Below are positions 1 through 43,126 of a stretch of 64,000 nt of DNA, piece by piece. The stretch covers positions 1 to 64,000 of the IMG/VR virus record IMGVR_UViG_3300042350_002797, one strand, 5' to 3'. The stretch's first letter is position 1; every line of letters starts with the position of its first letter. The position numbers were made by a program, and so were the translations under genes. Under the pieces are notes generated by a model, which made no database searches, was not told the origin of the DNA, and was given only the letters and a program-made list of their open reading frames with translations.

Positions 1-123
1 TACAGAACCCTACCGTTGAAATTGTACGGACCTTCTAGCCCAGGGTGTGGACAATATGCGTGACAACTATGGTCCACGCCCTGGGCTAGAAGGTCCGTAC
101 AATTTCAACGGTAGGGTTCTGTA
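1..123. repeat. 52-bp inverted repeat (1-52 / 72-123, one T:G mismatch, 19-nt loop) at the window edge
   Basis: Reverse complement of 1-52 equals 72-123 except position 46/78. Confidence 0.95.
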
Positions 124-220
124 CTACGATCCAAAGGAAGGCCAGTACTATGACCCACGCACAGACTTCTACGTCAGCCACTCAGAGTACTTCGAGATGG
201 TAGGCTTTATTGTAAAATAA
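56..220 (+). CDS. Small hypothetical phage protein (54 aa, true 5' end possibly lost in the fold-back)
   Basis: Hand translation MRDNYGPRPGLEGPYNFNGRVLYYDPKEGQYYDPRTDFYVSH..., stop TAA 218-220; below ORF-track cutoff. Confidence 0.65.
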   Translation: MRDNYGPRPGLEGPYNFNGRVLYYDPKEGQYYDPRTDFYVSHSEYFEMVGFIVK

Positions 221-229
221 GGAGTAAAT

Positions 230-403
230 ATGAACTACGCACCGCGACCTTACTATCGTGTAAGCATGAACCGCAAGCGTCAGATCATTGATGCCTGCGT
301 GGACGAGTTGCACAATCAGCAACTGGATATGATTGACGCTGCTGTAGAGTACAGTGATATGCGACAAGCTCGCGAAATTATTGATTATATAAGACAACTA
401 TGA
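230..403 (+). CDS. Small hypothetical protein (57 aa)
   Basis: AAGGAG SD at about 219-224, ATG 230, open to TGA 401-403. Confidence 0.7.
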   Translation: MNYAPRPYYRVSMNRKRQIIDACVDELHNQQLDMIDAAVEYSDMRQAREIIDYIRQL

Positions 404-470
404 CACCTAACACACCTAGATTCCCCGGCGACCCAGCAGACTACGACTTGCCTCCACACACGGACTAGTT

Positions 471-578
471 ATGAATATAACAACCACAGATGCCATAGCC
501 CTGGCCCTACTAATTGTTATAGGAATGTTAACTTTAGTCTACTTGGGCTGGCAGATAGCAGCTCTCTTTTTTGGTTGA
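471..578 (+). CDS. Small membrane peptide (35 aa)
   Basis: MNITTTDAIALALLIVIGMLTLVYLGWQIAALFFG: a single hydrophobic helix; no clear SD. Confidence 0.5.
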   Translation: MNITTTDAIALALLIVIGMLTLVYLGWQIAALFFG

Positions 579-603
579 CAAGTCCACGCTCTGGTGCTAT
601 ACT
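575..603 (+). promoter_or_regulatory. sigma70-type early promoter
   Basis: TTGACA (575-580), 17 bp, TATACT (598-603), extended -10 TG. Confidence 0.9.
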
Positions 604-635
604 ATAGACATAGTAAACAGTAAGGAGCGAAACAA

Positions 636-923
636 ATGCAAAAACATACTTGTCCGGAATGTAACGGATCAACACGTAAACCCTATAACCTAGACCCTAG
701 CTGGAAACGGGTCATTGCTGGCTACGATGCTGCAACAGATACACTACCCTGCCATAACTGCGGTTCACAGTATATGTTCGGCCGTGCTACAGGCTTAGTG
801 GGTCTGAACAGACTGGGCGTACCCTGTACACACATCTACAAAGGTCAGAACGCAGGACGCTGCTTGACAGAGTACACCTGCATCCACTGCGATGATAGAT
901 ATCAAATTGATTCTGGGGATTAA
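636..923 (+). CDS. Zn-finger-like hypothetical protein
   Basis: CPEC, CHNC, CIHC pairs; AAGGAGCG RBS upstream. Confidence 0.8.
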   Translation: MQKHTCPECNGSTRKPYNLDPSWKRVIAGYDAATDTLPCHNCGSQYMFGRATGLVGLNRLGVPCTHIYKGQNAGRCLTEYTCIHCDDRYQIDSGD

Positions 924-930
924 AAAGCGG

Positions 931-959
931 TTGACAATTGGATTGTTTGGTGTTATTAT
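931..959 (+). promoter_or_regulatory. sigma70-type early promoter
   Basis: TTGACA (931-936), 17 bp, TATTAT (954-959), extended -10 TG. Confidence 0.9.
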
Positions 960-989
960 ATACACATACTGAAACATAAGGAGCGTGAA

Positions 990-1178
990 ATGACTGATAC
1001 TAAATTCTACAAAATGATGGGCGTACTGCAACTGCTCATCGCTTTTATTAACTTCTACGTGGCCTTCGGGGCATTGAATACCCTGGCTGTGCTGAACATT
1101 GCTGTGGCTGTTATCTGTACTATGGCTGGCGTGTTCTGCACAGTGTTGGCAGCTAAACTTTTTGGAGCACTAGACTAA
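990..1178 (+). CDS. Small two-helix membrane protein
   Basis: 62 aa, two hydrophobic segments; AAGGAGCG RBS. Confidence 0.75.
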   Translation: MTDTKFYKMMGVLQLLIAFINFYVAFGALNTLAVLNIAVAVICTMAGVFCTVLAAKLFGALD

Positions 1179-1303
1179 TGGGCAAGTTCATACTGGGAGT
1201 AGTAGTAACCTTGGCAGTACTGTACCCAGCTGTGACCAAATACTATTTTGGCAATGCTGTGGACACTACTAATGCTGTGGTTAAAGGCGTAATGGAGAAG
1301 TAA
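1178..1303 (+). CDS. Small membrane/secreted peptide (41 aa)
   Basis: TAATG overlap with the previous stop; MGKFILGVVVTLAVLYPAV... hydrophobic N-terminus. Confidence 0.65.
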   Translation: MGKFILGVVVTLAVLYPAVTKYYFGNAVDTTNAVVKGVMEK

Positions 1304-1304
1304 C

Positions 1305-1685
1305 ATGGACAAAGATACTATGAAGGCCCTACGCGAAGTCGATGTCAACGAACTGTTCGAAGAGTTCGACGCTCAGGGCTATGCTATTGACTGTATCAAC
1401 GGCAACCTAATTCTAGATTACCCCTATGGCAATCAGGACTATTGCACTGGGATCCTAGAGGGAGCAGGCTTTTACAATATCTCTAACGATGAACTAGAAG
1501 CCTGTGAAGCGGGTATACGTGCTAGTTTACAAAGTGTTAACTATCAGCTAGAGCGAATGGATCTAGGCCTAGAAGTAGTCCAGTTAGACCTTACAGACAC
1601 TACCAGCTGGATGATCGTACCCGCAGGTGCTAGCCCAAAAAAGATTGTAAAATCAATCATAAAACGGTTGACAGAAACAGCATAA
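1305..1685 (+). CDS. Acidic hypothetical protein
   Basis: 126-aa ORF with GGAG SD. Confidence 0.75.
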   Translation: MDKDTMKALREVDVNELFEEFDAQGYAIDCINGNLILDYPYGNQDYCTGILEGAGFYNISNDELEACEAGIRASLQSVNYQLERMDLGLEVVQLDLTDTTSWMIVPAGASPKKIVKSIIKRLTETA

Positions 1686-1696
1686 GACTGTATTAT
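1668..1696 (+). promoter_or_regulatory. sigma70-type early promoter
   Basis: TTGACA (1668-1673), 17 bp, TATTAT (1691-1696). Confidence 0.9.
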
Positions 1697-1726
1697 ATAC
1701 ACATACTGTTAAACAAAGGAGCGAAG

Positions 1727-1861
1727 ATGTACACTAAATTTATTATCCGTTTGATTGATGCGATCCCAACACCTACTCCTGAGCAGGGTGATCGTTGGGT
1801 CACATACACTTGTATCTTTGGGTTTGGTTTTATTCTTGGTATGTTGGTAACTGGAGGCTAA
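1727..1861 (+). CDS. Small membrane peptide (44 aa)
   Basis: AAGGAGCGAA RBS then ATG 1727; C-terminal hydrophobic helix; stop TAA 1859-1861. Confidence 0.7.
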   Translation: MYTKFIIRLIDAIPTPTPEQGDRWVTYTCIFGFGFILGMLVTGG

Positions 1862-1863
1862 TC

Positions 1864-2058
1864 ATGCGTACATATGAAAATGTTGTTGAAATCGTAGCAA
1901 ACACACTGAGCCGTGCAGCACTAGGCGGCCCATTTGGATTCTATCTGTCAGATGCACAAATTGCCTACATCTACGGCAAGGACCGTGAAGTAGTAGAGAT
2001 GGACATTCAAATGGCCAAAGATATTGCTAATAAGAGATTGACAGACAGCTTTATCTAA
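1864..2058 (+). CDS. Hypothetical protein (64 aa; start re-called from 1795 to ATG 1864)
   Basis: GGAGG SD before ATG 1864; the longer call overlaps the 1727 ORF. Confidence 0.7.
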   Translation: MRTYENVVEIVANTLSRAALGGPFGFYLSDAQIAYIYGKDREVVEMDIQMAKDIANKRLTDSFI

Positions 2059-2066
2059 GTTATAAT
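2038..2066 (+). promoter_or_regulatory. sigma70-type early promoter (perfect consensus)
   Basis: TTGACA (2038-2043), 17 bp, TATAAT (2061-2066). Confidence 0.92.
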
Positions 2067-2071
2067 ATACA

Positions 2072-2095
2072 CTACACACTAGCAATAGTGTGTAG
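2072..2095 (+). promoter_or_regulatory. 5' leader hairpin, 10-bp stem with GCAA (GNRA) tetraloop
   Basis: CTACACACTA-GCAA-TAGTGTGTAG. Confidence 0.75.
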
Positions 2096-2130
2096 CAATA
2101 TTACACACTTATCAACAGAGCGGAGCTGAA

Positions 2131-2961
2131 ATGAAACATACAATGAACTTTGAAATCCCTAAGCTGAACAAGTCTGTACAAGAAACAGACGAGCAGATCA
2201 AAGAGCGACTGCGTGAGCGTTTTGAGATACTGAACGACATGACCCGTGCTGTAAAGAAGGGTGATGTACGTGCTATGATTGTAACGGGTCCGCCAGGCGT
2301 GGGCAAGAGCTTTGGTGTAGAAGAAGTACTAAGCAAACACGACCTAATGGCCACAGTGGCTAACAACAGCAAGCTTAAGAAGTATGAAGTAGTCAAAGGC
2401 GCTATGAGTGCGCTGGGTCTGTACTCAAAGTTATACGAGTACAAGGACGCTAAGAGTATCCTAGTGTTTGATGACTGCGATAGTGTATTGCAAGATGAAC
2501 TAAGCCTTAACATTCTAAAGGCTGCACTAGACAGTTCTAAGAAGCGTACCATACACTGGAACACTGACAGCAGACTGTTACGTGACCAGGGCGCACCTAA
2601 TAGCTTTGAGTTCAAGGGCGGTGCTATCTTTATCACTAACATTAAGTTTGAGAATGTACGTAGTAAGAAGCTACAGGATCACCTAGCAGCATTAGAGTCA
2701 CGCTGCCACTACTTGGATCTGACTATTGATACAGAGCGCGAGAAGATGCTGCGTATTGAACAGATCATAGAAGACGGCATGCTGTTAGAGTATGAGTTTA
2801 GTCAAGAAGAACAAGCTGAGCTAATCAGCTTTATAGACAACAACAAGAAGAAACTACGCGAACTGTCACTGCGTACAGTACTTAAGATAGCGGACTTGCG
2901 TAAGAGCTTTCCCTATAAGTGGCAAAGTGTAGCAGAGGTTACTTGTATGCGTCGCGGTTGA
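2131..2961 (+). CDS. AAA+/P-loop ATPase
   Basis: Walker A GPPGVGKS, Walker B LVFDD, ALESR arginine-finger-like motif. Confidence 0.85.
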   Translation: MKHTMNFEIPKLNKSVQETDEQIKERLRERFEILNDMTRAVKKGDVRAMIVTGPPGVGKSFGVEEVLSKHDLMATVANNSKLKKYEVVKGAMSALGLYSKLYEYKDAKSILVFDDCDSVLQDELSLNILKAALDSSKKRTIHWNTDSRLLRDQGAPNSFEFKGGAIFITNIKFENVRSKKLQDHLAALESRCHYLDLTIDTEREKMLRIEQIIEDGMLLEYEFSQEEQAELISFIDNNKKKLRELSLRTVLKIADLRKSFPYKWQSVAEVTCMRRG

Positions 2962-3051
2962 TTCGCTCCCAACCAGCATACTAGGTAAGGGCCAAGGTGG
3001 CCCACTTGATCCCCAGTGTCCGATTCGCTCCCGGCTCTGGGGATTTTTTTT
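2956..3051 (+). ncRNA. Candidate structured 3'-UTR/small RNA with two identical AUUCGCUCC loops
   Basis: GGTTG-ATTCGCTCC-CAACC (2956-2974); GGGCC-AAGGT-GGCCC; CCG-ATTCGCTCC-CGG inside the terminator stem ATCCCCAG/CTGGGGAT. Confidence 0.6.
3009..3051 (+). terminator. Rho-independent terminator closing the early region
   Basis: 8-bp GC-rich stem (3009-3016 / 3037-3044) followed by a T run to 3051. Confidence 0.85.
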
Positions 3052-3168
3052 CATCGAGAGATTGAGAAAAAGATTTCGAAAAGATCGGGGGTCGGGGCTT
3101 TATTATTTTGATTTTTTGTTGTTTTTTTGCAACACGTACCGATGCAAAATCACCACCTTGAAAGGAAA

Positions 3169-3250
3169 TAGTAGCTATTTAAAAATTTTCGCAGCTGCCA
3201 AAAACTAACCCCTAGGTACCCGTTTAGTAGCTGTAAAAAATTTTCGCAGC
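3169..3250. repeat. Direct repeat TAGTAGCT-N3/4-AAAAATTTTCGCAGC, two copies
   Basis: Copies at 3169-3195 and 3225-3250; degenerate third copy AAAAATCTTTTGCGGCTGC at 4417-4435. Confidence 0.8.
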
Positions 3251-3278
3251 ACTATTTTTTTATTGTGCAGATACTCTT

Positions 3279-3926
3279 TTACAAGTATCCTGGTCGAACC
3301 ATTGATCGGAAAAATTCACGTTTATGACTAGATTCTTCGCCCCATTCTTTACTAGTTAAATCCTGTATACTAATCTGATTCTCTATGTCCGGAAAGTAGT
3401 TATAAGGTAAAGGGTCTAACGAAAGAGTTAATGTTATTCTTGGTGTAGGGTTATCTTCTGCAAATTCCACACTATGTATTTCCATTGGCCTAATCAAAGT
3501 AGCATCTGTAATTTCACATCGAGTTTGTTCAACTAAATCGTCACGATTATAAGGGTAATATTTCAAGCCATTAGGCAGCATAATTCCACCTTGGTCAACA
3601 TATTCTGGTTTAGGTTCCCAAAATGTAGTCCATGTATTTGCAGTGTTCAATATAGGTATATTAACTCTTATGGGTATCACTGTGCTATCTTTGTGTGGAC
3701 TACCATGTGTGTTATTTTTCATAAAATAAGCACTGACCATAATCACCTTCATATCTAGATGATCAAATGCAGTCAATATTTCTGGAACTGCATCTGTGAA
3801 TTCTTGCCATTTGAAAATGTGAAATGTACTATTATATCTATCTTTAGTTTTACTTATAAATTCTCTAGTTTTAGTCTGTATAGCTTCTAAGTGTTGTACA
3901 GTAATTTTATGCCAATATTTTTTCAT
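3279..3926 (-). CDS. Putative Fe(II)/2OG oxygenase-like or cupin protein
   Basis: HKD (HxD) motif plus distal His in MEIHSVE; TAAATA late-promoter motif and purine-rich leader upstream. Confidence 0.5.
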   Translation of the reverse strand: MKKYWHKITVQHLEAIQTKTREFISKTKDRYNSTFHIFKWQEFTDAVPEILTAFDHLDMKVIMVSAYFMKNNTHGSPHKDSTVIPIRVNIPILNTANTWTTFWEPKPEYVDQGGIMLPNGLKYYPYNRDDLVEQTRCEITDATLIRPMEIHSVEFAEDNPTPRITLTLSLDPLPYNYFPDIENQISIQDLTSKEWGEESSHKREFFRSMVRPGYL

Positions 3927-3962
3927 ATTTCTACTTCTTTCTTTGATTTAATATACGCATAT

Positions 3963-4163
3963 TTATTCCTTAATTCTACACACTGCTTGTATTTGCAATT
4001 CTCTATGATGTATAATGACCTTACGTACTTCTTCGCAAGCAGCATGAGTAGTATACTCATGTTCCCAAGCACGCCATTCACCATCGGCTATGACCAATAC
4101 CCACAGTATCCATACTGTCATTAGTAGAACTCTGCACCTGGACGATATCCACGCTGCTCCCAT
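3963..4163 (-). CDS. Small hypothetical protein (true start probably downstream of 4163)
   Basis: Short ORF with hydrophobic segment and C...C pair, in the - strand gene run. Confidence 0.4.
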   Translation of the reverse strand: MGAAWISSRCRVLLMTVWILWVLVIADGEWRAWEHEYTTHAACEEVRKVIIHHRELQIQAVCRIKE

Positions 4164-4381
4164 TCGCCCAATTTACGGTCATTCCAATATATAAGAAAAT
4201 CGTCTCTACTTTCAAAATATTTTTGGAATTCTTCTGTGATACTTAGACAACTCCACATGTCTTGTCCGCCCAATTCGCCTTTCATGAATTCAGTATCGCA
4301 GTGCCAATACAGTACTTCCAGTTCTTCTCTAGGCAGTTCAGCAGCGTTCAGTGCCACTGTAAGTATAAGTGTTTTGAGCAT
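4121..4381 (-). CDS. Small putative exported protein
   Basis: AAGGAG SD, signal-peptide-like N-terminus, two Cys; TAAATA motif upstream. Confidence 0.6.
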   Translation of the reverse strand: MLKTLILTVALNAAELPREELEVLYWHCDTEFMKGELGGQDMWSCLSITEEFQKYFESRDDFLIYWNDRKLGEWEQRGYRPGAEFY

Positions 4382-4482
4382 GGTTGTGCTCCTTAAATTG
4401 TTATTTATGGGTTGTTAAAAATCTTTTGCGGCTGCGCTGACGCTTCGCGTTAGAGTATCTAGCGCGGTTGCCCTGCAGGTAT

Positions 4483-5337
4483 TCACGCTGGACTGTCTTG
4501 ATCTTTCTGGTCTAGTTTGCGCTTTAACAATGTGCCTAGACCAGTTTTTTTCTTTGGAGTATCCGCAGGTGGTGCAGGCGGCATCATTTTATTAGTACGT
4601 GGTCCAGATTTAATCTCATCATAATCAGGAATACTAGCACCGCCATCACTAATTGGATCCATCAAGACCAGTTGTGGTCCTACACTACTGCCACGCACAC
4701 GTATATTGTTCACGTGCAGATCCACATTCCAGTCTGGGTTTTCCTGTATAATTTTATCAATCAACAACAGTGCTTCTTTAAGTTGATCATCACGTATGTT
4801 TGTGTAGTTACTGCGTTCTACAGCACGATTAATTTGATTGGATATTTCTCTCCATACTGCATATGATTTGTTAGTAGTTCCTTCTAGATAACGCATATTG
4901 AATTCGTCGTTGAACAAACGTTCGTACATGCCAATAAGTGTTCTAGCTGGAAAGCTATCGCCCTGCTGTAGTTTTTCTATACGATAACGTGGACGTTGAT
5001 TACCCTTAGGATCTTGTGTAATGTCTATGTTATAGACCTGTGGAAAGAATGGATTGTGATAGCCCTGCTGTTTTAAGTCACGTATTTCCATAACGTACTT
5101 ATAGTAAGCATCTTTATCCAGTTTAGCAGTAAGATGTGGTTTCTTAATAAATTCGTGTGGATCGCGGGGATTAGTTTGTCCGCCACTGTACCAGCCTGGT
5201 TGTACGCCTTTGTTAAGTTCGCTGTCATTGTCGCGTTCTTGTTTGTCTTTAAGGGCATCAAAGTCAAAGCTAGGTTTACGATATCTTATCTTTTGATCAG
5301 TAGTATCGTATTCTTGTAGTATTTCTATAATTCGCAT
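4483..5337 (-). CDS. Protein-kinase-like (PKL) fold protein
   Basis: GWYSG glycine-loop-like, FIKK lysine, DLHVNN catalytic loop, LMDP metal-binding motif. Confidence 0.6.
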   Translation of the reverse strand: MRIIEILQEYDTTDQKIRYRKPSFDFDALKDKQERDNDSELNKGVQPGWYSGGQTNPRDPHEFIKKPHLTAKLDKDAYYKYVMEIRDLKQQGYHNPFFPQVYNIDITQDPKGNQRPRYRIEKLQQGDSFPARTLIGMYERLFNDEFNMRYLEGTTNKSYAVWREISNQINRAVERSNYTNIRDDQLKEALLLIDKIIQENPDWNVDLHVNNIRVRGSSVGPQLVLMDPISDGGASIPDYDEIKSGPRTNKMMPPAPPADTPKKKTGLGTLLKRKLDQKDQDSPA

Positions 5338-5437
5338 GTGTATATTTAATCGTGATTACCGTAATCTGTATTTTTTAACATAACGACTATAACTGCTATC
5401 ACTATAAGTAGGAGAAATAAATTTATTAGATCAAACA

Positions 5438-5677
5438 TTATTTTAGTCCTTTTTTTCTGTTAGATTCTGCTATACCTGACTGTATCATTTTTTTAAACAT
5501 TAATACTACACGACTTTTTTCTTTTTCGCTGAGTATTTTTACTAGTGTAAGTTTATCGTCATAGCTTTTGGCATTGTCCAGGAATTCAGCCGGTACTGCC
5601 AATTTAGGCTTTTTCTTAGCCATTTCTTTCTTCATATTAGCTAGGGCCTTGTCAGGGTCGTCGTTATCAGTAGTCAT
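5438..5677 (-). CDS. Hypothetical basic protein
   Basis: 79-aa ORF, AAAGGA SD, TAAATA upstream. Confidence 0.65.
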   Translation of the reverse strand: MTTDNDDPDKALANMKKEMAKKKPKLAVPAEFLDNAKSYDDKLTLVKILSEKEKSRVVLMFKKMIQSGIAESNRKKGLK

Positions 5678-5703
5678 AGTGATCCTTTCTAAGTCTATTT
5701 TAT

Positions 5704-6483
5704 TTACTTAGGTTCGCAGTCCACCCAACGTAAATTATTATAGTGTTCATAGGGCCACGTACCCTTAGGTACTAAACAAGTGCCTAATTCAGGTTGGTGT
5801 TCCATGCGTATTTGTACCACAGCCCATATTAACCAAATAAGATATAATATAGCCACAGTACTGCTAGACCAGCACAGTATTTTATATTGTATGCGTTTTT
5901 TGCGACGTGCCCGAATCTTCTTTTGTTCTGCTGTTCGTCGCATCTCTGCAGCAATGACAATACTTTGTTCTTTGCCCACTTTCTTCATCATCTCTTCGAC
6001 ATCAAGATACAATGGACCTAATTCTGGTGGACTTTGATAGACCATAATTTCACGCAATTCTGCGCTCATGTGTTCTAGTTGTTTTTTAAGTAATACTCGC
6101 ATTAATGCACGTTTACCTAAACTGTCTTCGCCGTGATATACTTCAGTTCTGCTGCGACGTTCTTCTTCTTCAAATACTGCTAGACATTTATAATAGTTGT
6201 CAAAATATGTTCCAAGATGTTGGCCAATTTCTGTATAGATGTTAGTAGTTTCGCCACCCTTTTTGTTCAGTTCTATTATGCGATTTTTTTCTGTGATAAA
6301 CTGATTACGTTCAGCCACAGTAGGTTGACGATCCTTGAATTTATTGGCGAATTGGTCGTCAAGGTCTTTAAGGATATCTTTGACATCCCCAGCAGCACCT
6401 TTAATTTCTTTATATAGTTCGCACCCTTTTTTGACCGCCTGGACTGCTCCGTTGGCCAGGGCAAAAAGGGTTAGCGGATCCAA
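5704..6483 (-). CDS. Coiled-coil protein with C-terminal transmembrane helix (TTG start)
   Basis: 259 aa; basic stretch RARRKKR then hydrophobic helix; GGAG upstream of TTG. Confidence 0.75.
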   Translation of the reverse strand: MDPLTLFALANGAVQAVKKGCELYKEIKGAAGDVKDILKDLDDQFANKFKDRQPTVAERNQFITEKNRIIELNKKGGETTNIYTEIGQHLGTYFDNYYKCLAVFEEEERRSRTEVYHGEDSLGKRALMRVLLKKQLEHMSAELREIMVYQSPPELGPLYLDVEEMMKKVGKEQSIVIAAEMRRTAEQKKIRARRKKRIQYKILCWSSSTVAILYLIWLIWAVVQIRMEHQPELGTCLVPKGTWPYEHYNNLRWVDCEPK

Positions 6484-6531
6484 GATCTAGATCTCCGCAT
6501 GGTTCGCTCCAAATTGTTCGCTCAGTAGTAT

Positions 6532-6975
6532 TTACTTGGAGGAGCTATCTTTAGGGTACCATGGTGTCATTCTAGGACTGTTTTGTACACTGTAATTCAT
6601 GCATTCGGCTAAAAATTCAAAATTACGGCTCAGCGTATTGAATAAATGATAGTTGATCTGTTCTGCGTGGCTATAGCTGGCTTTGCCTATTTGATAAAAG
6701 TAATCTTGATTGATGCCACGTCGTTCTAGCATATTAGGAAACACTGCGGCTGCAAACAGTGCTTGATCTCCTAATACCTTAGCTGCATGAGCTGTTTGAA
6801 TAGATAATAGTGTTTCAGCCCAACTAGGCTGAGGTTGCCAGTCAGGTTTATCAGTATAGTTTGCTAATACCGCACTCATATATTGTTCTATATAAGTAGG
6901 TATAGGCCAACCATGACGATGTTTAGCTTGGTCTATGATATCAAACCAAGCTGAATAGTACTCAGGTTCAATCAT
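6532..6975 (-). CDS. Hypothetical helical protein
   Basis: 147-aa ORF directly after TATAAATA (6983-6990). Confidence 0.75.
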   Translation of the reverse strand: MIEPEYYSAWFDIIDQAKHRHGWPIPTYIEQYMSAVLANYTDKPDWQPQPSWAETLLSIQTAHAAKVLGDQALFAAAVFPNMLERRGINQDYFYQIGKASYSHAEQINYHLFNTLSRNFEFLAECMNYSVQNSPRMTPWYPKDSSSK

Positions 6976-6993
6976 ACACTATTATTTATAGTG

Positions 6994-8409
6994 TCATGGG
7001 TCAGTTGGCAGATTACTCAATAGTTGTCTTAATTTACTGCTTTCGACCTGTACTTTACTAACAGACACACTGATACCTTCAGTAGGATCAGAATTAACTG
7101 TACTATTTCTTTGTAAGTTGTTCAATATTTGACTGCTACGGCTAGTGGTATCTGCCTCTGTTTGCCCTTCTTCACCTGGGTCAGTAATTCTCAATGTATC
7201 AATATCAAAGTCTAAGTCAATTTTCATACCTACACCACTGCTGCTACGAGTTTTCATTAATTGAATTTGATACTTACCGCGTTCACGCATAGCACGACTG
7301 GTAAAGATACCAAACACATTATCCGCTGTCTGGATCTTACTAAGTCCGCCTGAAATATGACTGTGATCGTATTCTACTTCTTCTACTGCACCTCGATTCA
7401 ACTGTGCCGCTGTGACCAGCACACACTGTTTCTCCATAGCCAAGTTACGCAGCTCTTCGCTGACATACTTGTCTTTGACAAATAAGTTTTCTGCTGAAAT
7501 TTTTCTACTTTGAGGCATCAACAAGTCTAGATAATCGACTAGCAGTACATCTACCTTACGTCCTAGTTTGATTTCATATTCTTTAAGATAACTTCTTATA
7601 TCATTGGCTGTTTTGCCGCTGGGCATGTATTTGACTTGATACGTTCCAGATTTTTTTCCAATGACCTTAACTTTCATTTCAACATCATCAATATTTTTAA
7701 AAATATCTCTAGTAGGTATTTCAGTAATCATGCTATCAATACGCATACTGACCAATTCCTCACTAAGTTCTAATGTAAGATATACTACATTCATTCCTTG
7801 TAGTGCCCAGTTAACTCCAAGATTAGCTAAGAATAAACTTTTACCTGCACCTGATCCGCCAGCAAAGATATTCAATTCGCCTCGATTCATACCTCCGAAC
7901 AATCTTTTATCCACAGTTTGCCAACCTGTAGTCATTTGTCCATTTTTATCTTTTATTCGCATTAGTCTACTTCTCGGATCTTCAAAGTAGTCAGTGCCCA
8001 TGTCTTTAGTTAGTCCTACTTGCACTGCCTGCTTGACTAATTCTTCTACTGGGCCATATTCTCCTTTTTCTAACAAGTCAGCACTTTTTAAAATAGCCTG
8101 TTCTAATCCTTTATGTCTAATAAAAGTTTCAAAGTCTTGTAACAGCCAATCGTAGTGTTCTTCTTTCAAATCTCCTGGAGATTTTAAATCAGATTTTGTA
8201 GCCGCATTTACTATTTCATATGTAGGTAGTACGCTATGCTCTGATACATAATCGTTAATAAATTTAGCAGTGTTTTGTAATTTTCTATCAAACAACTCAT
8301 GATGAAAAATGCTTTGGCATCTTACAAAAGTTTCTGCATCATTCAACATCATTTCTAAGTAAAGATGTTGTATATCATATCCGTAGTCTGCGTTTTGTCT
8401 TGTAGTCAT
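6994..8409 (-). CDS. gp41: DnaB-family replicative helicase (T4 gp41-like)
   Basis: Walker A GGSGAGKS, LTLELSEE, LLVDYLDL, TAAQLNR, KTRSSSGVG. Confidence 0.93.
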   Translation of the reverse strand: MTTRQNADYGYDIQHLYLEMMLNDAETFVRCQSIFHHELFDRKLQNTAKFINDYVSEHSVLPTYEIVNAATKSDLKSPGDLKEEHYDWLLQDFETFIRHKGLEQAILKSADLLEKGEYGPVEELVKQAVQVGLTKDMGTDYFEDPRSRLMRIKDKNGQMTTGWQTVDKRLFGGMNRGELNIFAGGSGAGKSLFLANLGVNWALQGMNVVYLTLELSEELVSMRIDSMITEIPTRDIFKNIDDVEMKVKVIGKKSGTYQVKYMPSGKTANDIRSYLKEYEIKLGRKVDVLLVDYLDLLMPQSRKISAENLFVKDKYVSEELRNLAMEKQCVLVTAAQLNRGAVEEVEYDHSHISGGLSKIQTADNVFGIFTSRAMRERGKYQIQLMKTRSSSGVGMKIDLDFDIDTLRITDPGEEGQTEADTTSRSSQILNNLQRNSTVNSDPTEGISVSVSKVQVESSKLRQLLSNLPTDP

Positions 8410-9383
8410 ATTTTATTATATTTTATCTCTATGTGTTTAGTATCTTCGTTTGTTTGATAATTTACATGATTTTTAGTATGTGCCAATACTGCTCCAATTG
8501 CACTACTAGCATCGCCTGGCCAAGGTAAACTCCAAATGCCTCTCCATTGGTGTCTTAGTTGTCGATTAAATTTACTATTGTATGCACAGCCGCCCATATA
8601 AACAAGATTTCTAAAATTAGTTAAATTTCTAGCTTTAACCATTATGTAATCCATTTGTTCTTCAAATACTTTTTGAACTGCGGCGGCGATATCGCATTTA
8701 TCTTGATCAGTTAAGTTATAGTCAAAAGGCCAATTATATACACCTTTATGTAGATTATATTTTAGCACTGCTGGTTTTTTAAAATAGTCTAGCACAGTAT
8801 CATAGTATATAAATGGATTACCCTTATCGCTTAATTTTTGTAAAAAATGTTCTTGTGCAGCGGGTCTAAGTCCAATCAAATCTGTAAAGGCACTATAGAA
8901 TATACCTAAACTATTTGGATAGCTTTCGCTCCACAATTTTTCTAAATTCCTGCCATGCCCACTCCATATGCTTATAGTTTCAAATTCTCCTATAGCATCT
9001 ACAACGACCACGGCTGCTCTATTAAAATTACTAGTATAATACCCTGCGGCAGCATGACTATGATGGTGTGGTGTATAGATTATAGGGCAGTCAATATTAA
9101 ATTTTCTAAGATATACACTAGGTATATTGTCAATACTAAATGCTTCTTTATATTGTCCTGCTGTTAGTTGACGTAGTTTTTTTAAAAATGGACGTTCATA
9201 CCAATATACAGTTTCAGGTTCTCCGTATATTGTTATAGCATGATGTATAATTTCTTGATTTAGATAATGATCTCCTTGTATGTGTGTAAAGTCGCTACTT
9301 CTTCTATGCCATACAGGTTCGTTGTCTCTGAACACACATATGCTAGCATCGTGGTTTAGTGCATTAATACCCCATACAATCAT
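8406..9383 (-). CDS. Carbamoyltransferase (NodU/CmcH family), N-terminal Kae1-like domain only
   Basis: GINALNHDAS, HHHSHAAAGY, VVDAIGE, MGGCAYN, GDASSAIGA; no GPRALGNRS C-domain. Confidence 0.8.
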   Translation of the reverse strand: MIVWGINALNHDASICVFRDNEPVWHRRSSDFTHIQGDHYLNQEIIHHAITIYGEPETVYWYERPFLKKLRQLTAGQYKEAFSIDNIPSVYLRKFNIDCPIIYTPHHHSHAAAGYYTSNFNRAAVVVVDAIGEFETISIWSGHGRNLEKLWSESYPNSLGIFYSAFTDLIGLRPAAQEHFLQKLSDKGNPFIYYDTVLDYFKKPAVLKYNLHKGVYNWPFDYNLTDQDKCDIAAAVQKVFEEQMDYIMVKARNLTNFRNLVYMGGCAYNSKFNRQLRHQWRGIWSLPWPGDASSAIGAVLAHTKNHVNYQTNEDTKHIEIKYNKI

Positions 9384-9390
9384 AATTGGC

Positions 9391-9504
9391 CTACTTATAG
9401 ATAAAAGGATCTCTTGCTTTTAGTTCTTGTAAACGTTTTTTCCATTTACGATGTTCTAAGTATCTATTATACGGATACATTAAGATTTCTAAAATTTTTT
9501 TCAT
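9391..9504 (-). CDS. Small basic protein (37 aa)
   Basis: Hand translation MKKILEILMYPYNRYLEHRKWKKRLQELKARDPFIYK fills the gap between primase and carbamoyltransferase. Confidence 0.6.
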   Translation of the reverse strand: MKKILEILMYPYNRYLEHRKWKKRLQELKARDPFIYK

Positions 9505-9505
9505 A

Positions 9506-10474
9506 TTAAGCCTCAAACCATTTTTTTGATAGCAGTTTTATCTTCAATCCTGAAGTTTCTTTAGATCGAATTATACTGTATAATGTTGCTAGTCTTCCGT
9601 ACTTTAATAATGCTTCGTTAGCATCTTTAATATCCGGATCCCAGTTAGGAAAACTTACACTCCAATTATTTTCTATTGCTTGATCTACTAACTTTTTTCC
9701 AGCTGAATCTCTGTCTGGTAAAATAATTACTTCTCTTTTAAGTTGATTAATTAGAGTTTTTTGTTGATCACTTATTTCACTACCTAGTATTGCTACGCCG
9801 TCGATACTAATTGCATCAAACGGTCCTTCGCACACTATTACATATTTACGATTTTCTTTTTGATTATCAAAATTAAACACATATCCTGGTTGTTGTTCCG
9901 AAATGTATTTAGGTTTACCATCACGCAACAGCCTAGCCGTAAACCCTACTAAATTTTTATTAAAGTAAAAAGGAACAATTAATCTATTAGGATATGCAGG
10001 GCTCCAATACCATTCGTAATCATCGAGATAAAATCCTCGATTAGCAATATATTCTATCGCTAAATTCATATCATCGTGATACTCTGCTTCTCCTATTTTT
10101 ACACTATCAGGAGGTAATATTTTATCAATAAATTTTGGTAGAATGTCGAATTTTGATTTGTAATCCGAATTTTCTTTTAATCTAAGTGCTTCTAAACTGC
10201 ATTTTGAAATTAAATCGTCTGGTACATTTAACCAGCGCATCAATTTTCGAAATTTTGTAGTTACTATTCTTCCAGGTTGCCAACTAGTTTTAAATCCGCA
10301 GTTAAAACAATGATAGCTAACTCCTTCATTAATCATCATACCTCCACGCTGTCTAGTATCAGAGGAAGTACCGTTATGATGACAGCAGACAGCATTAAAA
10401 CTTATCCATCCGCTGGGAGTCTTTTTTCTTCTAGAAGGCAAGTGTAAGCTGATTGTATCTATGACTAGACTCAT
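9506..10474 (-). CDS. gp61: DNA primase (T4 gp61-like)
   Basis: Zn-binding CCHH...CFNC; TOPRIM CEGPFD and PDRD. Confidence 0.92.
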   Translation of the reverse strand: MSLVIDTISLHLPSRRKKTPSGWISFNAVCCHHNGTSSDTRQRGGMMINEGVSYHCFNCGFKTSWQPGRIVTTKFRKLMRWLNVPDDLISKCSLEALRLKENSDYKSKFDILPKFIDKILPPDSVKIGEAEYHDDMNLAIEYIANRGFYLDDYEWYWSPAYPNRLIVPFYFNKNLVGFTARLLRDGKPKYISEQQPGYVFNFDNQKENRKYVIVCEGPFDAISIDGVAILGSEISDQQKTLINQLKREVIILPDRDSAGKKLVDQAIENNWSVSFPNWDPDIKDANEALLKYGRLATLYSIIRSKETSGLKIKLLSKKWFEA

Positions 10475-10483
10475 AGATATATT

Positions 10484-11296
10484 TTACGATATTACTAATA
10501 TTTTGTCAATAGATCCGGTGTTCGCTGTATCCGGAAGATATTTAATTCTTAACCAACTTATATTATTACTGTAATCGGTTATTTCATTATACACTTTACT
10601 AACAACATCAGTAGAATTATTGATATTAAAAGTTTCTAAATCTGACCAATTAGTTGCTGCACTAACTACTGCATCGGTAGTTATTTGTACAGTTACTTCA
10701 GCATCGAAGTTAGTTAATCGAAATTCTAATTTAATTTGATGCGTGTCATTGACATCATTTCTTGGATTAACTTCTACAGACGAACTGTAATAAGTGGTTA
10801 TATCTGGGTTTACTGAATCGTCGATTAGGTATATGAATTTGTCTATAATTTGAGCAGGAACAGATTCTGGTACAACACCATTCAGTAAATCAATTATACC
10901 AGTAGCGCCAAACTGACTATCTCCGTATAGCAGTGTTTTTGTACCGTCATCGTTTAAAATGTAAAGGCTAAATTTTAAGAACTGAGGCTTTATATAATCA
11001 ATTTGTTCTGCATAAATTGTCATAGTAGCTAGTCCTGTAGTGTTAATTACAGGCTCTACGTCGACTGTTAAAACTTCGGTATTGTAATGATCTAAAATAA
11101 CACATTTCAGATTATAATTTGTAATTGATATACGTTTTTGATCAGCATTTCGCACGTCAAATTCCACGACGTTTTTCACGCCTTTGTACAATTTTATTCT
11201 TCGTTGGTACACAGGTCTATACTCCACAGGATATGACGCCAAATCGGCAACTACCGAAATTCTATTTGAATATAAATAACTTGAAATTTTTTGCAT
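10484..11296 (-). CDS. Hypothetical beta-rich protein, probably structural (start re-called to ATG 11296)
   Basis: TAAATA at 11305-11310 lies 8 nt before MQKISS; longer call overlaps the opposite gene. Confidence 0.65.
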   Translation of the reverse strand: MQKISSYLYSNRISVVADLASYPVEYRPVYQRRIKLYKGVKNVVEFDVRNADQKRISITNYNLKCVILDHYNTEVLTVDVEPVINTTGLATMTIYAEQIDYIKPQFLKFSLYILNDDGTKTLLYGDSQFGATGIIDLLNGVVPESVPAQIIDKFIYLIDDSVNPDITTYYSSSVEVNPRNDVNDTHQIKLEFRLTNFDAEVTVQITTDAVVSAATNWSDLETFNINNSTDVVSKVYNEITDYSNNISWLRIKYLPDTANTGSIDKILVIS

Positions 11297-11309
11297 CTTA
11301 ACTGTATTT

Positions 11310-11687
11310 ATGGCGAAATTAAGAGAAAACATACAAGAACAATTACCCTTTATTTCTGTGCTTCATTATGGAGAAAGCGAATACGTTGGGATTATAATAA
11401 ATCAAGATCAATACGTAACTAGTTTTTTTGATTTGAGCATGTTAAAAACTGCTGAAGATAAAGCTGGATTATTAGAGATCGGAGAAATTTGGTGGTGGGA
11501 ATCTAACAGACAGGTTCCTATAAACATATTTCTTAGAAAGGAAATAGAACCTTATCGATACGCTATTAAAACCTTTAATAGCAAAGATGTCAGAATAATG
11601 CTCGGGCCAGTAGTGAATTTATTAAATTTAACTATAAAACGAGTTAAAAGAAAAAGTGTTCAGTTAGTAAGAGCCCCAAAACGTTAA
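11310..11687 (+). CDS. Hypothetical protein
   Basis: 125-aa ORF; TATAAATA at 11271-11278 upstream. Confidence 0.7.
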   Translation: MAKLRENIQEQLPFISVLHYGESEYVGIIINQDQYVTSFFDLSMLKTAEDKAGLLEIGEIWWWESNRQVPINIFLRKEIEPYRYAIKTFNSKDVRIMLGPVVNLLNLTIKRVKRKSVQLVRAPKR

Positions 11688-12262
11688 CTAAATTCATAAC
11701 TTACTTTTTCACATATTAAGTTCATTTGTACTACAATTGCCTGAGCATAAGCTATGGCATGCGCCTTTTTAAAATAATATTCATCATTTTCTGGTTTTTT
11801 CCAAACCTCTTCTAAGATCGTCGACCATGGCTCTCCAACTAGGTATCTCTTCGCTGGTCGTATCACTGCTAATACTGCTGCTAATTGTTCTATCGTTATT
11901 GGTTTCATTTGACGTAATATAGAACCATGCCCGTTTACGTGAAAGAGTAAGTCGATGAACTCGTCTTGTTCTAGAAGATCCCATAATGGTTCCGTCTCCA
12001 TCAATTTTTTTAAATGTTCTTCGTTTTTTACATCTTTGTAAACACTAACATTTAGCAAGTCTATTTTAAAATATCCTCGTTCTTCCGCAGTTTTATAATC
12101 AATGTTTGATAGATTTGTTATAGGATTAGAGGGTATAGGTTGCACATAGATACCGGTATTATGTGGTACTAACAAATCATTTTGTAATCGACTAGCTCTA
12201 ATATGTTTAATATGTTTAAGAGCTAATTCACGATCTGCAAAGTCTATATCGATATCAGGCAT
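11684..12262 (-). CDS. Miniature DNA polymerase III alpha (DnaE/family C)-like catalytic-core protein
   Basis: PDIDIDF, PHNTGIYV, GYFKIDLLNV, YYFKKAHAIAYA correspond to DnaE palm/fingers motifs. Confidence 0.75.
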   Translation of the reverse strand: MPDIDIDFADRELALKHIKHIRASRLQNDLLVPHNTGIYVQPIPSNPITNLSNIDYKTAEERGYFKIDLLNVSVYKDVKNEEHLKKLMETEPLWDLLEQDEFIDLLFHVNGHGSILRQMKPITIEQLAAVLAVIRPAKRYLVGEPWSTILEEVWKKPENDEYYFKKAHAIAYAQAIVVQMNLICEKVSYEFS

Positions 12263-24921: not shown

Positions 24922-25655
24922 TTAGTTCCATACTGTATTTCTACTATTTTTAAAGGAGTAGACGACGGATTACATAATTGGTGCCATTCTTCTTTTTTAA
25001 TATGTAATGATTGATGTTTATGAAAGGTTCCTACAAATTCGTGATCGCTTTTGCGATTTATAGTATATACTTCCGCTGTACCTTCGACAATAAACCAATG
25101 TTCTGATCTATCTTGATGCTTTTGCATAGACAACGATTGTCCGGGATTTACAGTAAGTTCTTTTACTTTAACTTCTGTATTGTTTTCATGCAATATTCGA
25201 TAATATCCCCAAGGCCTCTGTGTTGTAGGATATTTCCATTCTTCTAATATCCATGAACTAGAATTTTTCTTATCAGATCCGCCGACACCAAAGGCAAACT
25301 CTAGGTGATTGTCTGTGATATCCATTTCTGGAATATTTAATGCTGTGCGATCGCCACCGTTAGCAAAAATAATATGATCTTGAGGATAACTTTGTCTGAC
25401 CATCCATATAGCATGGTTAGCTGTATTGTCGTTATCATCAAAATCGATGACAAAATCGACCCCTTTAATATTACGCAAAATATTAGCACGTTCCATTAAA
25501 GGCATAAAACATTTACCTTTTTTACGAGCTAACCATTGATCGGAATTTACACCAATAACTAGTAAATCTCCTAGTTTACTGGCTTCTTGAATGTAAGATA
25601 TATGTCCAGAATGGATCGGATCAAATCCACCTGTTATCAACACGATTTTTTTCAT
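24891..25655 (-). CDS. Cytidylyltransferase-family domain fused to a mannose-6-phosphate-isomerase-type cupin
   Basis: TGGFDPIHSGH (HIGH-like), NGGDR; QRPWGYY, SMQKHQDRSEHW, EIQYG. Confidence 0.85.
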   Translation of the reverse strand: MKKIVLITGGFDPIHSGHISYIQEASKLGDLLVIGVNSDQWLARKKGKCFMPLMERANILRNIKGVDFVIDFDDNDNTANHAIWMVRQSYPQDHIIFANGGDRTALNIPEMDITDNHLEFAFGVGGSDKKNSSSWILEEWKYPTTQRPWGYYRILHENNTEVKVKELTVNPGQSLSMQKHQDRSEHWFIVEGTAEVYTINRKSDHEFVGTFHKHQSLHIKKEEWHQLCNPSSTPLKIVEIQYGTNCVEEDIERK

Positions 25656-42784: not shown

Positions 42785-43126
42785 ATGACCAGACCATTGT
42801 GTTTATGTGGATTCCGACCAGCAGCAATTAACTATATTAAGAATAATAAAACTTATTATAGAAAAAAATGTGAGGCATGTTTAAAGGCCGGAGGAATCGC
42901 TGCTGGAGTACCAAAATGGTACCTAAGTGGTTATAGAAAAAAACTAGTCTGTGACAAGTGTAATTTCAAAGGTAGACATTTAGAACAATTTAATGTGTTT
43001 TATATTGATGGAAATCTAAACAATGTTAAGCACACAAATTTAAAAACAGTATGTGCTAATTGTCAAAGAGTGCTACACAAAGAAGGAATCATTTGGAAAC
43101 AAGGTGATCTTCGACCTGATTTTTAA
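42785..43126 (+). CDS. Zn-binding HNH-like protein
   Basis: CLC, CEAC, CDKC, YIDGNLNN, CANC; TATAAATA 5 nt before ATG. Confidence 0.65.
   Translation: MTRPLCLCGFRPAAINYIKNNKTYYRKKCEACLKAGGIAAGVPKWYLSGYRKKLVCDKCNFKGRHLEQFNVFYIDGNLNNVKHTNLKTVCANCQRVLHKEGIIWKQGDLRPDF

What the first reader, a model, noticed from the sequence alone, without database searches (positions are those of the whole stretch)
4483..5337. Late, possibly capsid-packaged kinase-like effector
The protein has recognisable PKL motifs (GWYSG, FIKK, DLHVNN, LMDP), a Pro/Lys-rich tail, a TAAATA motif 5 nt before ATG, and the N-terminus MRIIEILQE, reminiscent of the T4 capsid-targeting sequence MKTYQEFIAE with an I/L-X-E protease site. 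A kinase made late and injected with the DNA would act before any phage transcription, unlike the early-expressed T7 gp0.7 kinase.
Basis: partly seen in the sequence, partly recalled or inferred. Interest (0 to 1): 0.6.

Follow-up and report, generated by a model that had tools for sequence, protein, structure and literature searches.

The report
Late-promoter T7-kinase relative in jumbo phage
A 364-kb lake-water phage carries a short relative of the phage T7 protein kinase (a known anti-defence enzyme), here behind a late-gene promoter that abuts its start codon; packaging of the enzyme into the capsid for injection is possible but not shown.

Summary
No Pfam, PHROG or PDB sequence match exists. 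A profile of 132 relatives aligns to the T7 gp0.7 kinase (T7K): hhalign 93%, E 3e-7. G48, K65, DLHxxN and D227-P228-I229-S230 align with T7K's G76, K93, DMHxxN and DPV-S216. AlphaFold models (pLDDT 90) match only kinases. The domain stops about ten residues after the DP motif. T7K's shut-off domain is absent, and a disordered Pro/Lys tail takes its place. The clade is large (1,167 clusters at 50% identity) and almost wholly metagenomic. "TAAATA 5 nt before ATG" is a genome-wide rule: 11 genes have it, including terminase and tail tube, and replication genes lack it. The spacing recurs before orthologues in unrelated contexts, and the phage encodes a gp55-like sigma. Late, probably leaderless, transcription is therefore well supported by inference. 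For packaging, the phage has a T4 gp21-type protease, and 11 unrelated ORFs share the N-terminal M-[KR]-Φ-x-E-Φ-Φ leader (0.63 expected). Against it, non-packaged T7K and the Munch kinase start similarly. Packaging remains untested (about 0.25).

The parts
4483..5337 (-). CDS of 284 aa: a stand-alone T7K-like protein kinase. The core is residues about 10-240, followed by a tail.
   Evidence: ORF. hhalign against T7 gp0.7: 93%, E 3.3e-7. Profile hit on T7 gene 0.7: E 6.9e-7. AlphaFold pLDDT 89.8. Fold hits are all kinases.
5311..5337 (-). N-terminal nine residues, MRIIEILQE. They fit the pattern M-[KR]-Phi-x-E-Phi-Phi-x-E and contain two Phi-x-E sites (I3-I4-E5 and L7-Q8-E9).
   Evidence: 87 of 132 family members fit the pattern. 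E5 is present in 116 of 132. pLDDT for residues 1-10 is only 62. The same pattern occurs on 11 ORFs of the genome against 0.63 expected.
5182..5196 (-). GWYSG, the glycine-rich ATP loop. G48 aligns with T7K G76.
   Evidence: G48 is present in 125 of 132 members. Alignment. G76F is the catalytically dead T7K mutant (PMC13645617).
5140..5151 (-). FIKK. K65 is the beta-3 ATP-binding lysine and aligns with K93 in T7K's VIKV.
   Evidence: K65 is present in 118 of 132 members. Alignment. It lies in strand 62-67 of the model.
4705..4722 (-). DLHVNN, the catalytic loop. D206 is the catalytic base and N211 the Mg-binding Asn, with the same D-to-N spacing as HRDLKxxN.
   Evidence: D206 is present in 131 of 132 members and N211 in 132 of 132. 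It aligns with T7K's DMHSGN.
4648..4659 (-). D227-P228-I229-S230, the DFG-equivalent DP-Phi motif plus a Ser at the position of T7K Ser216.
   Evidence: D and P are present in 132 of 132 members, and position 229 is L, I, V or F. It aligns with T7K's DPVS. DPV and Ser216 are described in PMC13645617.
4486..4605 (-). Pro/Lys-rich tail (residues 245-284), disordered, with a short basic helix (GLGTLLKRKL). It is present in only part of the close relatives.
   Evidence: pLDDT is about 52, with a helix at 268-276. The alignment shows the tail is facultative. The family median length is 236 aa.
5343..5348 (-). TAAATA, the core of a T4-type late promoter. The 5-nt spacer at 5338-5342 would place the transcript start at or next to the A of the ATG.
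   Evidence: Genome-wide spike at 5 nt. Conserved before orthologues. gp55-like sigma. ATAAATA is described as the late motif in the related phages CBB and GAP32 (PMC5259590).

Best explanation
The gene encodes an active-looking, stand-alone Ser/Thr(/Tyr) protein kinase of the phage T7 gp0.7 (T7K) superfamily. It keeps the ATP-binding and phosphotransfer residues: G48, K65, D206, N211 and the DP-Phi motif that replaces DFG. It lacks the whole C-terminal substrate-binding subdomain of ordinary kinases and also T7K's DNA-binding shut-off domain. In their place it carries a disordered Pro/Lys-rich tail. It belongs to a very large, unannotated clade found almost only in uncultured phages, several of them T4-like jumbo phages. 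Unlike T7K, which is an early gene, this gene sits directly behind a T4-type late-promoter core. The spacing would start the mRNA at the ATG (leaderless), the same arrangement the phage uses for its terminase, tail tube and other virion genes. The most likely mechanism is that the gp55-like sigma directs late transcription, and the kinase then phosphorylates many host and phage proteins late in infection. Plausible roles are blunting defences that respond to late proteins or tuning late host physiology. Shown here: homology, conserved catalytic residues, predicted fold, promoter pattern and its conservation. Inferred: kinase activity, substrates, timing and the leaderless start.
For: Homology: hhalign of the 132-sequence profile against T7 gp0.7 gives 93%, E 3.3e-7, over 149 columns with all motifs in register. 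The same profile finds gene 0.7 in a six-frame scan of T7 (E 6.9e-7). It also finds the T7K-like ORF of phage Munch (hhalign 93.3%, E 2.7e-7), which T7K itself hits (E 1.6e-9). The ESM-Atlas fold search is topped by a viral cluster carrying PF27024 Phage_T7_kinase (TM 0.57/0.69). The feature search gives 0.94 with 189 of 256 shared features. Fold: two AlphaFold models (pLDDT 82.9 and 89.8); all 50 top VIA rows are kinases (Z 4.7-6.1), and the listed Foldseek rows are all kinase-fold proteins. Conservation. Late promoter: 52 of 69 ATAAATA copies lie within 60 nt upstream of ORFs, and 11 ORFs have TAAATA exactly 5 nt from the ATG, including terminase, tail tube and a virion protein. Replication genes lack the motif. 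TAAATA lies 4-7 nt before the ATG in 10 of 12 distinct orthologue loci, despite unrelated flanks and gene contexts. A gp55-like sigma is present. The literature identifies ATAAATA as the late motif in the relatives CBB and GAP32.
Against: No Pfam, PHROG or PDB sequence hit was found, and none of the 132 relatives matched a kinase Pfam family. Fold scores are modest: Foldseek E is at best 2.8e-3 and Z is at most 6.1. There is no conserved alpha-C glutamate (position 84 is Glu in 10 of 132 members). The promoter copy here reads TTAAATA, not the commoner ATAAATA, and its first three bases are the stop codon of a small upstream ORF. No terminator separates the gene from upstream replication genes on the same strand, so earlier read-through transcription is possible. 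No RNA evidence covers the gene. Activity and substrates are untested, and a late role for a promiscuous kinase has no known precedent.
Confidence: 0.65

Rival explanations
1. The kinase is made late, carried into the prohead by its N-terminal leader, possibly trimmed by the gp21-type protease at a Phi-x-E site, and injected with the DNA. It would then act before any phage transcription.
For: The gene has a late promoter of the kind used for virion genes. The phage encodes a Peptidase_S77 (T4 gp21-type) prohead protease (E 1.3e-25). The leader M-[KR]-Phi-x-[ED]-Phi-Phi heads 11 mutually unrelated ORFs against 0.63 expected, with 0 of 5000 column shuffles reaching 11. Comparison jumbo phages have only 0-3. 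Most leaders have Glu at positions 5 and 9, which makes (I/L)-x-E sites like T4's FIAE. T4 head-core proteins start in a similar way. In PA5oct, one of its two leader-bearing ORFs is a 73-aa virion protein detected by mass spectrometry, encoded right after the portal gene. Residues 1-10 are the least confident conserved part of the model, as expected for a free peptide.
Against: T7K, which is early and not packaged in a phage without a T4-type (gp21-like) prohead protease, starts MNITDIM. The Munch kinase starts MTKQEIF. The N-terminus therefore looks like a trait of the kinase superfamily. Glu9 is found in only a few of the 132 relatives (11 of 132 fit the pattern with a Glu at position 9). 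Other leader-bearing ORFs look like cytoplasmic enzymes: a cytidylyltransferase-like protein, a HAD/polynucleotide-kinase-like plus GH19 fusion, and a DUF6267 protein. The gene lies among replication genes. No virion proteome exists for any carrier.
Confidence: 0.25
2. The gene is not specifically late. The TAAATA is incidental (it contains the stop codon of the upstream small ORF), and the gene is co-transcribed with the helicase/primase block as a middle gene. It would then act like T7K during takeover.
For: The gene is on the same strand as the DnaB helicase and primase, with tight spacing and no predicted terminator. The motif is TTAAATA rather than ATAAATA, and TAA is the small ORF's stop codon.
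Against: The spacing is kept before orthologues where the small ORF is absent and the flank is GC-rich (L004, L012). It is also kept in different gene contexts (L002, L024) and directly after a terminator hairpin in L025. Even non-A-preceded TAAATA is enriched at 5 nt (4 copies against about 0.55 expected).
Confidence: 0.2
3. It is not a protein kinase. It would instead be a small-molecule or nucleic-acid kinase (like APH, FN3K or PsiK), or a pseudokinase with another chemistry such as AMPylation.
For: The best Foldseek rows include PsiK, FN3K and APH(2''). D-L-H-x-x-N resembles the loop of small-molecule kinases. The gene has no substrate-binding lobe. DNA-modification-type genes lie nearby: a carbamoyltransferase, methyltransferases, and a 2OG oxygenase in relatives.
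Against: The only relatives detectable by sequence are T7K and the Munch kinase. T7K is a proven protein kinase with the same truncated build (PMC13645617). All 50 VIA rows are kinase entries, nearly all of them protein kinases or pseudokinases. All catalytic residues are retained, so a pseudokinase is unlikely. Synteny with modification genes is not kept in distant relatives.
Confidence: 0.1

Closest known systems
Phage T7 gp0.7 protein kinase (T7K; Pfam PF27024 Phage_T7_kinase)
   Same: The kinase cores are homologous, with the Gly loop, beta-3 Lys, D-x-H-x-x-N loop, DP-Phi in place of DFG, and a Ser right after it all in register. Both lack the usual C-terminal kinase subdomain. Both start with a similar short N-terminal motif.
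   Different: Identity is about 21% and is detectable only with profiles. The shut-off/DNA-binding domain is absent, and a Pro/Lys tail takes its place. A late-type promoter abuts the ATG here, whereas T7K is a class I early gene. The carrier is a 364-kb T4-like myovirus, not a 40-kb podovirus.
Jumbophage T7K homologues (Salmonella phage Munch, Escherichia phage G17; Nature 2026, PMC13645617)
   Same: These are stand-alone kinases of about 213 aa that lack the shut-off domain. The residue after DP is variable. They occur in jumbo myoviruses, and their function is unknown.
   Different: This is a different clade. The Munch ORF is nearer to T7K (E 1.6e-9) than to this family's profile (E 5e-5). 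BLAST finds this family in only two cultured phages. The related jumbo phages GAP32 and PA5oct, scanned here, have no TAAATA spike at 5 nt. This clade adds a 47-residue N-terminal extension and a longer helical insert before the catalytic loop.
Kinase-PolyVal domain of polyvalent proteins (Iyer et al. 2017, PMC5512222; PF18762)
   Same: It is a phage or conjugative-element kinase that has lost the entire C-terminal subdomain but keeps the active site. It is proposed to modify host proteins in conflicts. A PF18762-bearing cluster appeared at rank 29 of the feature search, with a score of 0.91.
   Different: No Pfam match was found. This protein is stand-alone and not part of a multidomain polyvalent protein. 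The family's distinguishing features could not be aligned or tested here.
T4 internal proteins and Alt with the capsid-targeting sequence
   Same: They share a short N-terminal leader with acidic and hydrophobic periodicity and a (L/I)-x-E protease site. The phage has a gp21-type protease. The leader is shared by unrelated proteins.
   Different: The resemblance is in pattern only. Packaging and cleavage are untested, and similar N-termini occur in non-packaged kinase homologues.

Membership tests
T7 gp0.7 (T7K)-like phage protein kinases | Sequence homology to the T7K kinase domain | tested here: met
   hhalign gives 93%, E 3.3e-7, over 149 columns. The HMM hits T7 gene 0.7 at E 6.9e-7. Atlas clusters carry PF27024.
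T7 gp0.7 (T7K)-like phage protein kinases | A DP(V) motif in place of DFG | tested here: met
   D227-P228-I229 is present. D and P occur in 132 of 132 members, and the next residue is L, I, V or F. It aligns with T7K DPV 213-215.
T7 gp0.7 (T7K)-like phage protein kinases | The Gly-loop glycine equivalent to G76, the beta-3 Lys, and the D-x-H-x-x-N catalytic loop | tested here: met
   G48 (125/132), K65 (118/132), D206 (131/132) and N211 (132/132) are conserved and align in register with T7K.
T7 gp0.7 (T7K)-like phage protein kinases | A serine directly after DPV (the Ser216 autophosphorylation site) | tested here: met
   S230 is present here and invariant in the 32 close relatives. It is Ser in only 36 of 132 members of the wider clade.
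T7 gp0.7 (T7K)-like phage protein kinases | A C-terminal shut-off (SO) DNA-binding domain | tested here: not met
   The protein ends in a 40-residue disordered Pro/Lys tail. The family median length is 236 aa. The published jumbophage homologues also lack this domain.
T7 gp0.7 (T7K)-like phage protein kinases | Early expression | tested here: not met
   This rests on sequence inference only: a late-type TAAATA lies 5 nt from the ATG and is conserved before orthologues. There are no transcript data.
T7 gp0.7 (T7K)-like phage protein kinases | Ser/Thr/Tyr phosphotransfer activity | not testable with these tools
   This needs enzyme assays or phosphoproteomics.
Protein-kinase-like (PKL) fold | An N-lobe sheet with helix C, a hinge, a catalytic loop and Mg-binding residues | tested here: met
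   The AlphaFold model has pLDDT 89.8. All 50 top VIA rows are kinases, with Z 4.7-6.1 and 122-149 residues aligned. The listed Foldseek rows are all PKL.
Protein-kinase-like (PKL) fold | A C-terminal helical subdomain (helices F to I) and an activation segment | tested here: not met
   The conserved domain ends about 10 residues after D227, and structural matches stop at model residue about 232-236.
T4-type capsid-targeted internal proteins | A prohead protease of the gp21 type in the genome | tested here: met
   PF03420 Peptidase_S77 matches at G000 84820-85278(-), E 1.3e-25.
T4-type capsid-targeted internal proteins | An N-terminal leader shared by unrelated proteins of the same phage and ending in (L/I)-x-E | tested here: met
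   11 ORFs carry it against 0.63 expected, and they are not paralogues. Comparison phages have 0-3. L7-Q8-E9 is present here.
T4-type capsid-targeted internal proteins | A leader specific to packaged proteins | tested here: not met
   Early, non-packaged T7K starts MNITDIM and the Munch kinase starts MTKQEIF. 87 of 132 family members carry the motif.
T4-type capsid-targeted internal proteins | Protein present and N-terminally processed in virions | not testable with these tools
   No virion proteome exists for any carrier. PA5oct, which has one, lacks the gene.
Kinase-PolyVal (PF18762) | A match to the family model and a location inside a polyvalent multidomain protein | tested here: not met
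   No Pfam family matches at E up to 10, and the ORF is stand-alone. Only the loss of the C-terminal subdomain is shared.
T4-type late promoter | A TATAAATA-like core about one helical turn before the start, a gp55-type sigma, and association with virion genes | tested here: inconclusive
   The core here is TTAAATA, matching 6 of 7 bases of the genome's ATAAATA. A gp55-like ORF is present (E 1.7e-6). The motif precedes terminase, sheath, tube and virion proteins but not replication genes. The transcript start is not mapped.

The most novel reading that the evidence does not exclude
This phage group pre-loads its capsid with a T7K-type, broadly acting protein kinase. Other enzymes carrying the same nine-residue N-terminal leader would be packaged too, via a T4-like capsid-targeting and gp21-protease route. 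The kinase would enter the next host with the DNA and disarm defences before any phage gene is expressed. That would make it the first packaged protein kinase of a bacteriophage.
Probability: 0.22. Interest if true: 0.85.

Novelty: new variant of a known kind. Interest (0 to 1): 0.55.

Why it matters
T7K was recently shown to be a hyper-promiscuous kinase that disarms bacterial defences. Its few jumbophage homologues were left as "function unknown" (PMC13645617). This finding shows that the T7K superfamily has a much larger hidden branch: 1,167 clusters at 50% identity, with no Pfam model in the copy used and only two cultured carriers. It also shows that this branch is wired the opposite way in time, to a late and probably leaderless promoter of the kind used by virion genes. 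That raises a testable question: is a promiscuous kinase used late, or pre-packaged for the next infection? It also names cultured phages (Stenotrophomonas RAS14 and CM1) in which the question can be tested.

Tried and rejected
- **Sequence searches.** Pfam, PHROG and PDB searches with the protein and with its profile gave nothing usable. None of the 132 relatives matched a kinase Pfam family; four single, unrelated hits appeared at E up to 0.01. T7 gp0.7 itself also has no hit in this Pfam copy, so the copy lacks PF27024.
- **Big representative search.** I used it because the family scans left the protein open.
- **Foldseek.** No match was below E 1e-3, so I rely on the uniformity of the hits rather than their scores.
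- **PA5oct virion proteome.** Using it to test packaging failed. PA5oct, GAP32 and Phosso lack the gene, and PA5oct has only two leader-bearing ORFs.
- **Transcription evidence.** One metatranscriptome contig lies on the neighbouring 79-aa gene (5450-5663) and none lies on the kinase. All runs are contigs, so no 5' ends can be read.
- **Terminators and sigma-70 promoters.** Around the gene they are no better than shuffles.
- **Rfam on 1-12000.** The only hit is a sub-threshold miRNA-model match, which I dismiss.
- **Paralogy.** It does not explain the shared leader: there is no second kinase in the genome and no similarity among the leader-bearing ORFs.
- **An mRNA-level cause of the leader.** This is unlikely, because the leader-bearing ORFs have varied upstream regions, some with Shine-Dalgarno sites.
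- **AMPylation or a pseudokinase.** I found no supporting feature.
- **Complex prediction.** I did not use it, because no specific binding claim is made.

Full report
**Observation.** The ORF at 4483-5337 lies on the minus strand and encodes 284 aa. The motifs GWYSG (48-52), FIKK (63-66), DLHVNN (206-211) and LMDP (225-228) are all present. So are the Pro/Lys-rich tail (245-284) and the N-terminus MRIIEILQE. TAAATA lies at 5343-5348, then five bases, then the ATG. T4 IPII and IPIII do begin MKTYQEFIAE.

**Genome.** The window is the first 64 kb of a 364,554-bp viral record with 36% GC. About 19 lake-water metagenome runs hold it, 14 of which may be the assembly's own source. It is a T4-superfamily jumbo myovirus:
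- Its terminase is 56% identical to that of PA5oct and 44% to those of GAP32 and CBB.
- It encodes a DnaB helicase, primase, UvsX, gp32-like SSB, tail sheath and tail tube.
- It has a gp21-type prohead protease (PF03420, E 1.3e-25) and a gp55-like sigma (E 1.7e-6).

**What the protein is.**
- Pfam, PHROG and PDB sequence searches are blank.
- The word search found 50 relatives. One, UFOVP257_182, is named "Protein kinase domain-" by UniRef.
- Because the family scans left the protein open, I ran the exhaustive profile search. It found 1,167 clusters at 50% identity with E up to 1e-3. Among 132 aligned relatives the median length is 236 aa, and none matches a kinase Pfam family.
- Across those 132 sequences P99, N211, V224, D227 and P228 are invariant. 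G48, K65, D76, N95, E121, D206 and R215 are 89-99% conserved.
- AlphaFold gives pLDDT 82.9 with 32 sequences and 89.8 (pTM 0.82) with 132. Residues 10-245 are confident and the tail is disordered.
- Foldseek scores are weak (best E 2.8e-3), but every listed row is a kinase-fold protein. All 50 top rows of the Foldseek-independent search are kinases, with Z 4.7-6.1.
- The ESM-Atlas fold search is topped by a viral 230-aa cluster (TM 0.57/0.69) in which 10% of members carry PF27024 Phage_T7_kinase. The feature search agrees, at 0.94 with 189 of 256 shared features.

**Link to T7K.**
- hhalign of the family profile against T7 gp0.7 gives 93% probability and E 3.3e-7 over 149 columns.
- The aligned pairs are G48/G76, K65/K93, NPFFPQVY/RPGIPNVY, DLHVNNIRV/DMHSGNIMF and LMDPIS/ITDPVS.
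- The profile also finds gene 0.7 in a six-frame scan of T7 (E 6.9e-7).
- It finds the 213-aa T7K-like ORF of phage Munch, which T7K itself hits.
- The 2026 Nature paper on T7K (PMC13645617) reports that G76F is catalytically dead, that DPV (213-215) replaces DFG, and that Ser216 is an autophosphorylation site. It also reports that jumbophage homologues lack the shut-off domain and have unknown function.
- The protein is therefore a T7K-superfamily kinase of a new, large clade. BLAST finds cultured carriers only in Stenotrophomonas phages CM1 and RAS14.
- The domain ends about ten residues after the DP motif. Iyer et al. noted the same loss of the C-terminal subdomain for Kinase-PolyVal (PMC5512222).

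**Promoter.**
- Of 69 ATAAATA copies in the genome, 52 lie within 60 nt upstream of ORF starts.
- TAAATA sits either 15-30 nt upstream of the ATG, with a GGAG-type site in between, or exactly 5 nt upstream with none. The second arrangement occurs at 11 ORFs.
- The 5-nt class includes the terminase, the tail tube, an 818-aa virion protein and the small gene after the portal. The replication genes lack the motif.
- CBB and GAP32 use ATAAATA before structural genes (PMC5259590).
- From established knowledge of T4, the late core is centred about 10 bp before the transcript start. A 5-nt spacer would therefore start the mRNA at the A of the ATG. That step is an inference.
- Before orthologues, TAAATA lies 4-7 nt from the ATG in 10 of 12 distinct loci. 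These include loci with GC-rich flanks, loci in different gene contexts, and one placed right after a terminator hairpin and just upstream of the terminase. RAS14 has the motif 24 nt upstream with a Shine-Dalgarno site.
- The 5-nt spike is shared with RAS14 (7 ORFs) but not with GAP32 (0) or PA5oct (1).
- Caveats: the copy here reads TTAAATA, and its TAA is the stop codon of a 30-aa ORF. No terminator isolates the gene, and no RNA evidence covers it.

**Packaging.**
- The pattern M-[KR]-[ILVA]-x-[ED]-[ILVF]-[ILVFT] heads 11 ORFs against 0.63 expected, and 0 of 5000 column shuffles reach 11. These ORFs are mutually unrelated. Comparison genomes have 0-3.
- Most of these leaders have Glu at positions 5 and 9, which creates gp21-like sites.
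- One PA5oct example is a virion protein detected by mass spectrometry, encoded next to the portal gene.
- Against packaging: 87 of 132 kinase relatives carry the motif. T7K (MNITDIM) and the Munch kinase (MTKQEIF) begin alike. Several leader-bearing ORFs look like ordinary enzymes.
- I rate packaging at about 0.25.

**Verdict.** The kinase identity is firm, at the level of homology and fold. Late, leaderless expression is probable. Packaging is open. This is a new variant of a known kind.

Noticed in passing
window 33287-34885, 37499-38557, 30822-33278, 24891-25655, 42785-43126; also G000 86884-87123 and others: A class of genes has the late-promoter core TAAATA exactly 5 nt before the ATG and no Shine-Dalgarno site, which predicts leaderless late mRNAs. 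There are 11 such ORFs here and 7 in Stenotrophomonas phage RAS14, against 0-1 in GAP32 and PA5oct. A full-text search for TATAAATA, leaderless and phage found no paper.
   Followed up: partly
window 43788-44144; G000 174115-179172, 291648-298080, 266155-266763, 303846-304181, 338610-338885, 86884-87123, 92342-93328: A shared N-terminal leader, M-[KR]-Phi-x-E-Phi-Phi(-x-E), occurs on at least 11 unrelated ORFs. Two clusters of four neighbouring genes carry it. The set includes a 607-aa HAD/polynucleotide-kinase-like plus GH19 lysin fusion, a cytidylyltransferase-like protein and a DUF6267 protein.
   Followed up: partly
window 5346-5438 (-): An unannotated 30-aa hydrophobic ORF (MFDLINLF...). 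It overlaps the stop codon of the 79-aa gene upstream, and its own stop codon is the TAA of the kinase's TAAATA. Its C-terminus (KN-T/I-DY...) is kept, with synonymous changes, in relatives L010, L011, L013 and L014. In L004 and L012 a GC-rich spacer replaces it.
   Followed up: partly
window 404-635, 2962-3278, 4382-4482, 6418-6531: Intergenic patches of 64-67% GC occur in a 36% GC genome, around the small late-promoter gene cluster at 3279-6975. Similar GC-rich spacers lie upstream of the kinase gene in L004 and L012. They gave no Rfam hit and no significant fold.
   Followed up: partly
window 3279-6975 (-): Five consecutive genes of unknown function each have their own TAAATA-type motif, at 7, 23, 5, 20 and 33 nt from the ATG. 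They form a late-looking island between the DnaB helicase and an AAA ATPase gene.
   Followed up: partly
window 8406-9383 (-): The carbamoyltransferase ORF next to the helicase is 325 aa and has only the N-terminal domain. The orthologue in L004 is 486 aa and has both domains, and a 2OG-Fe(II) oxygenase follows the helicase there. This may be a nucleotide or DNA-modification module, truncated or split here.
   Followed up: no
L026 2-1202: Two kinase-family genes lie in tandem. The upstream ORF ends in ...GTQLVITDPLN and is directly followed by a second family member.
   Followed up: no
L025 3636-5880: In a distant relative, the kinase gene sits between a terminator hairpin and the terminase large-subunit gene. 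Its stop codon abuts the terminase ATG, so the kinase and terminase would be co-transcribed.
   Followed up: no
window 5450-5663: A 214-nt contig from an aquatic metatranscriptome run is identical to part of the 79-aa gene just upstream of the kinase. DNA carry-over cannot be excluded.
   Followed up: no
window 11684-12262 (-): A 192-aa ORF matches only a DNA polymerase fragment family (phrog_11778). The polymerase may be split into several ORFs.
   Followed up: no
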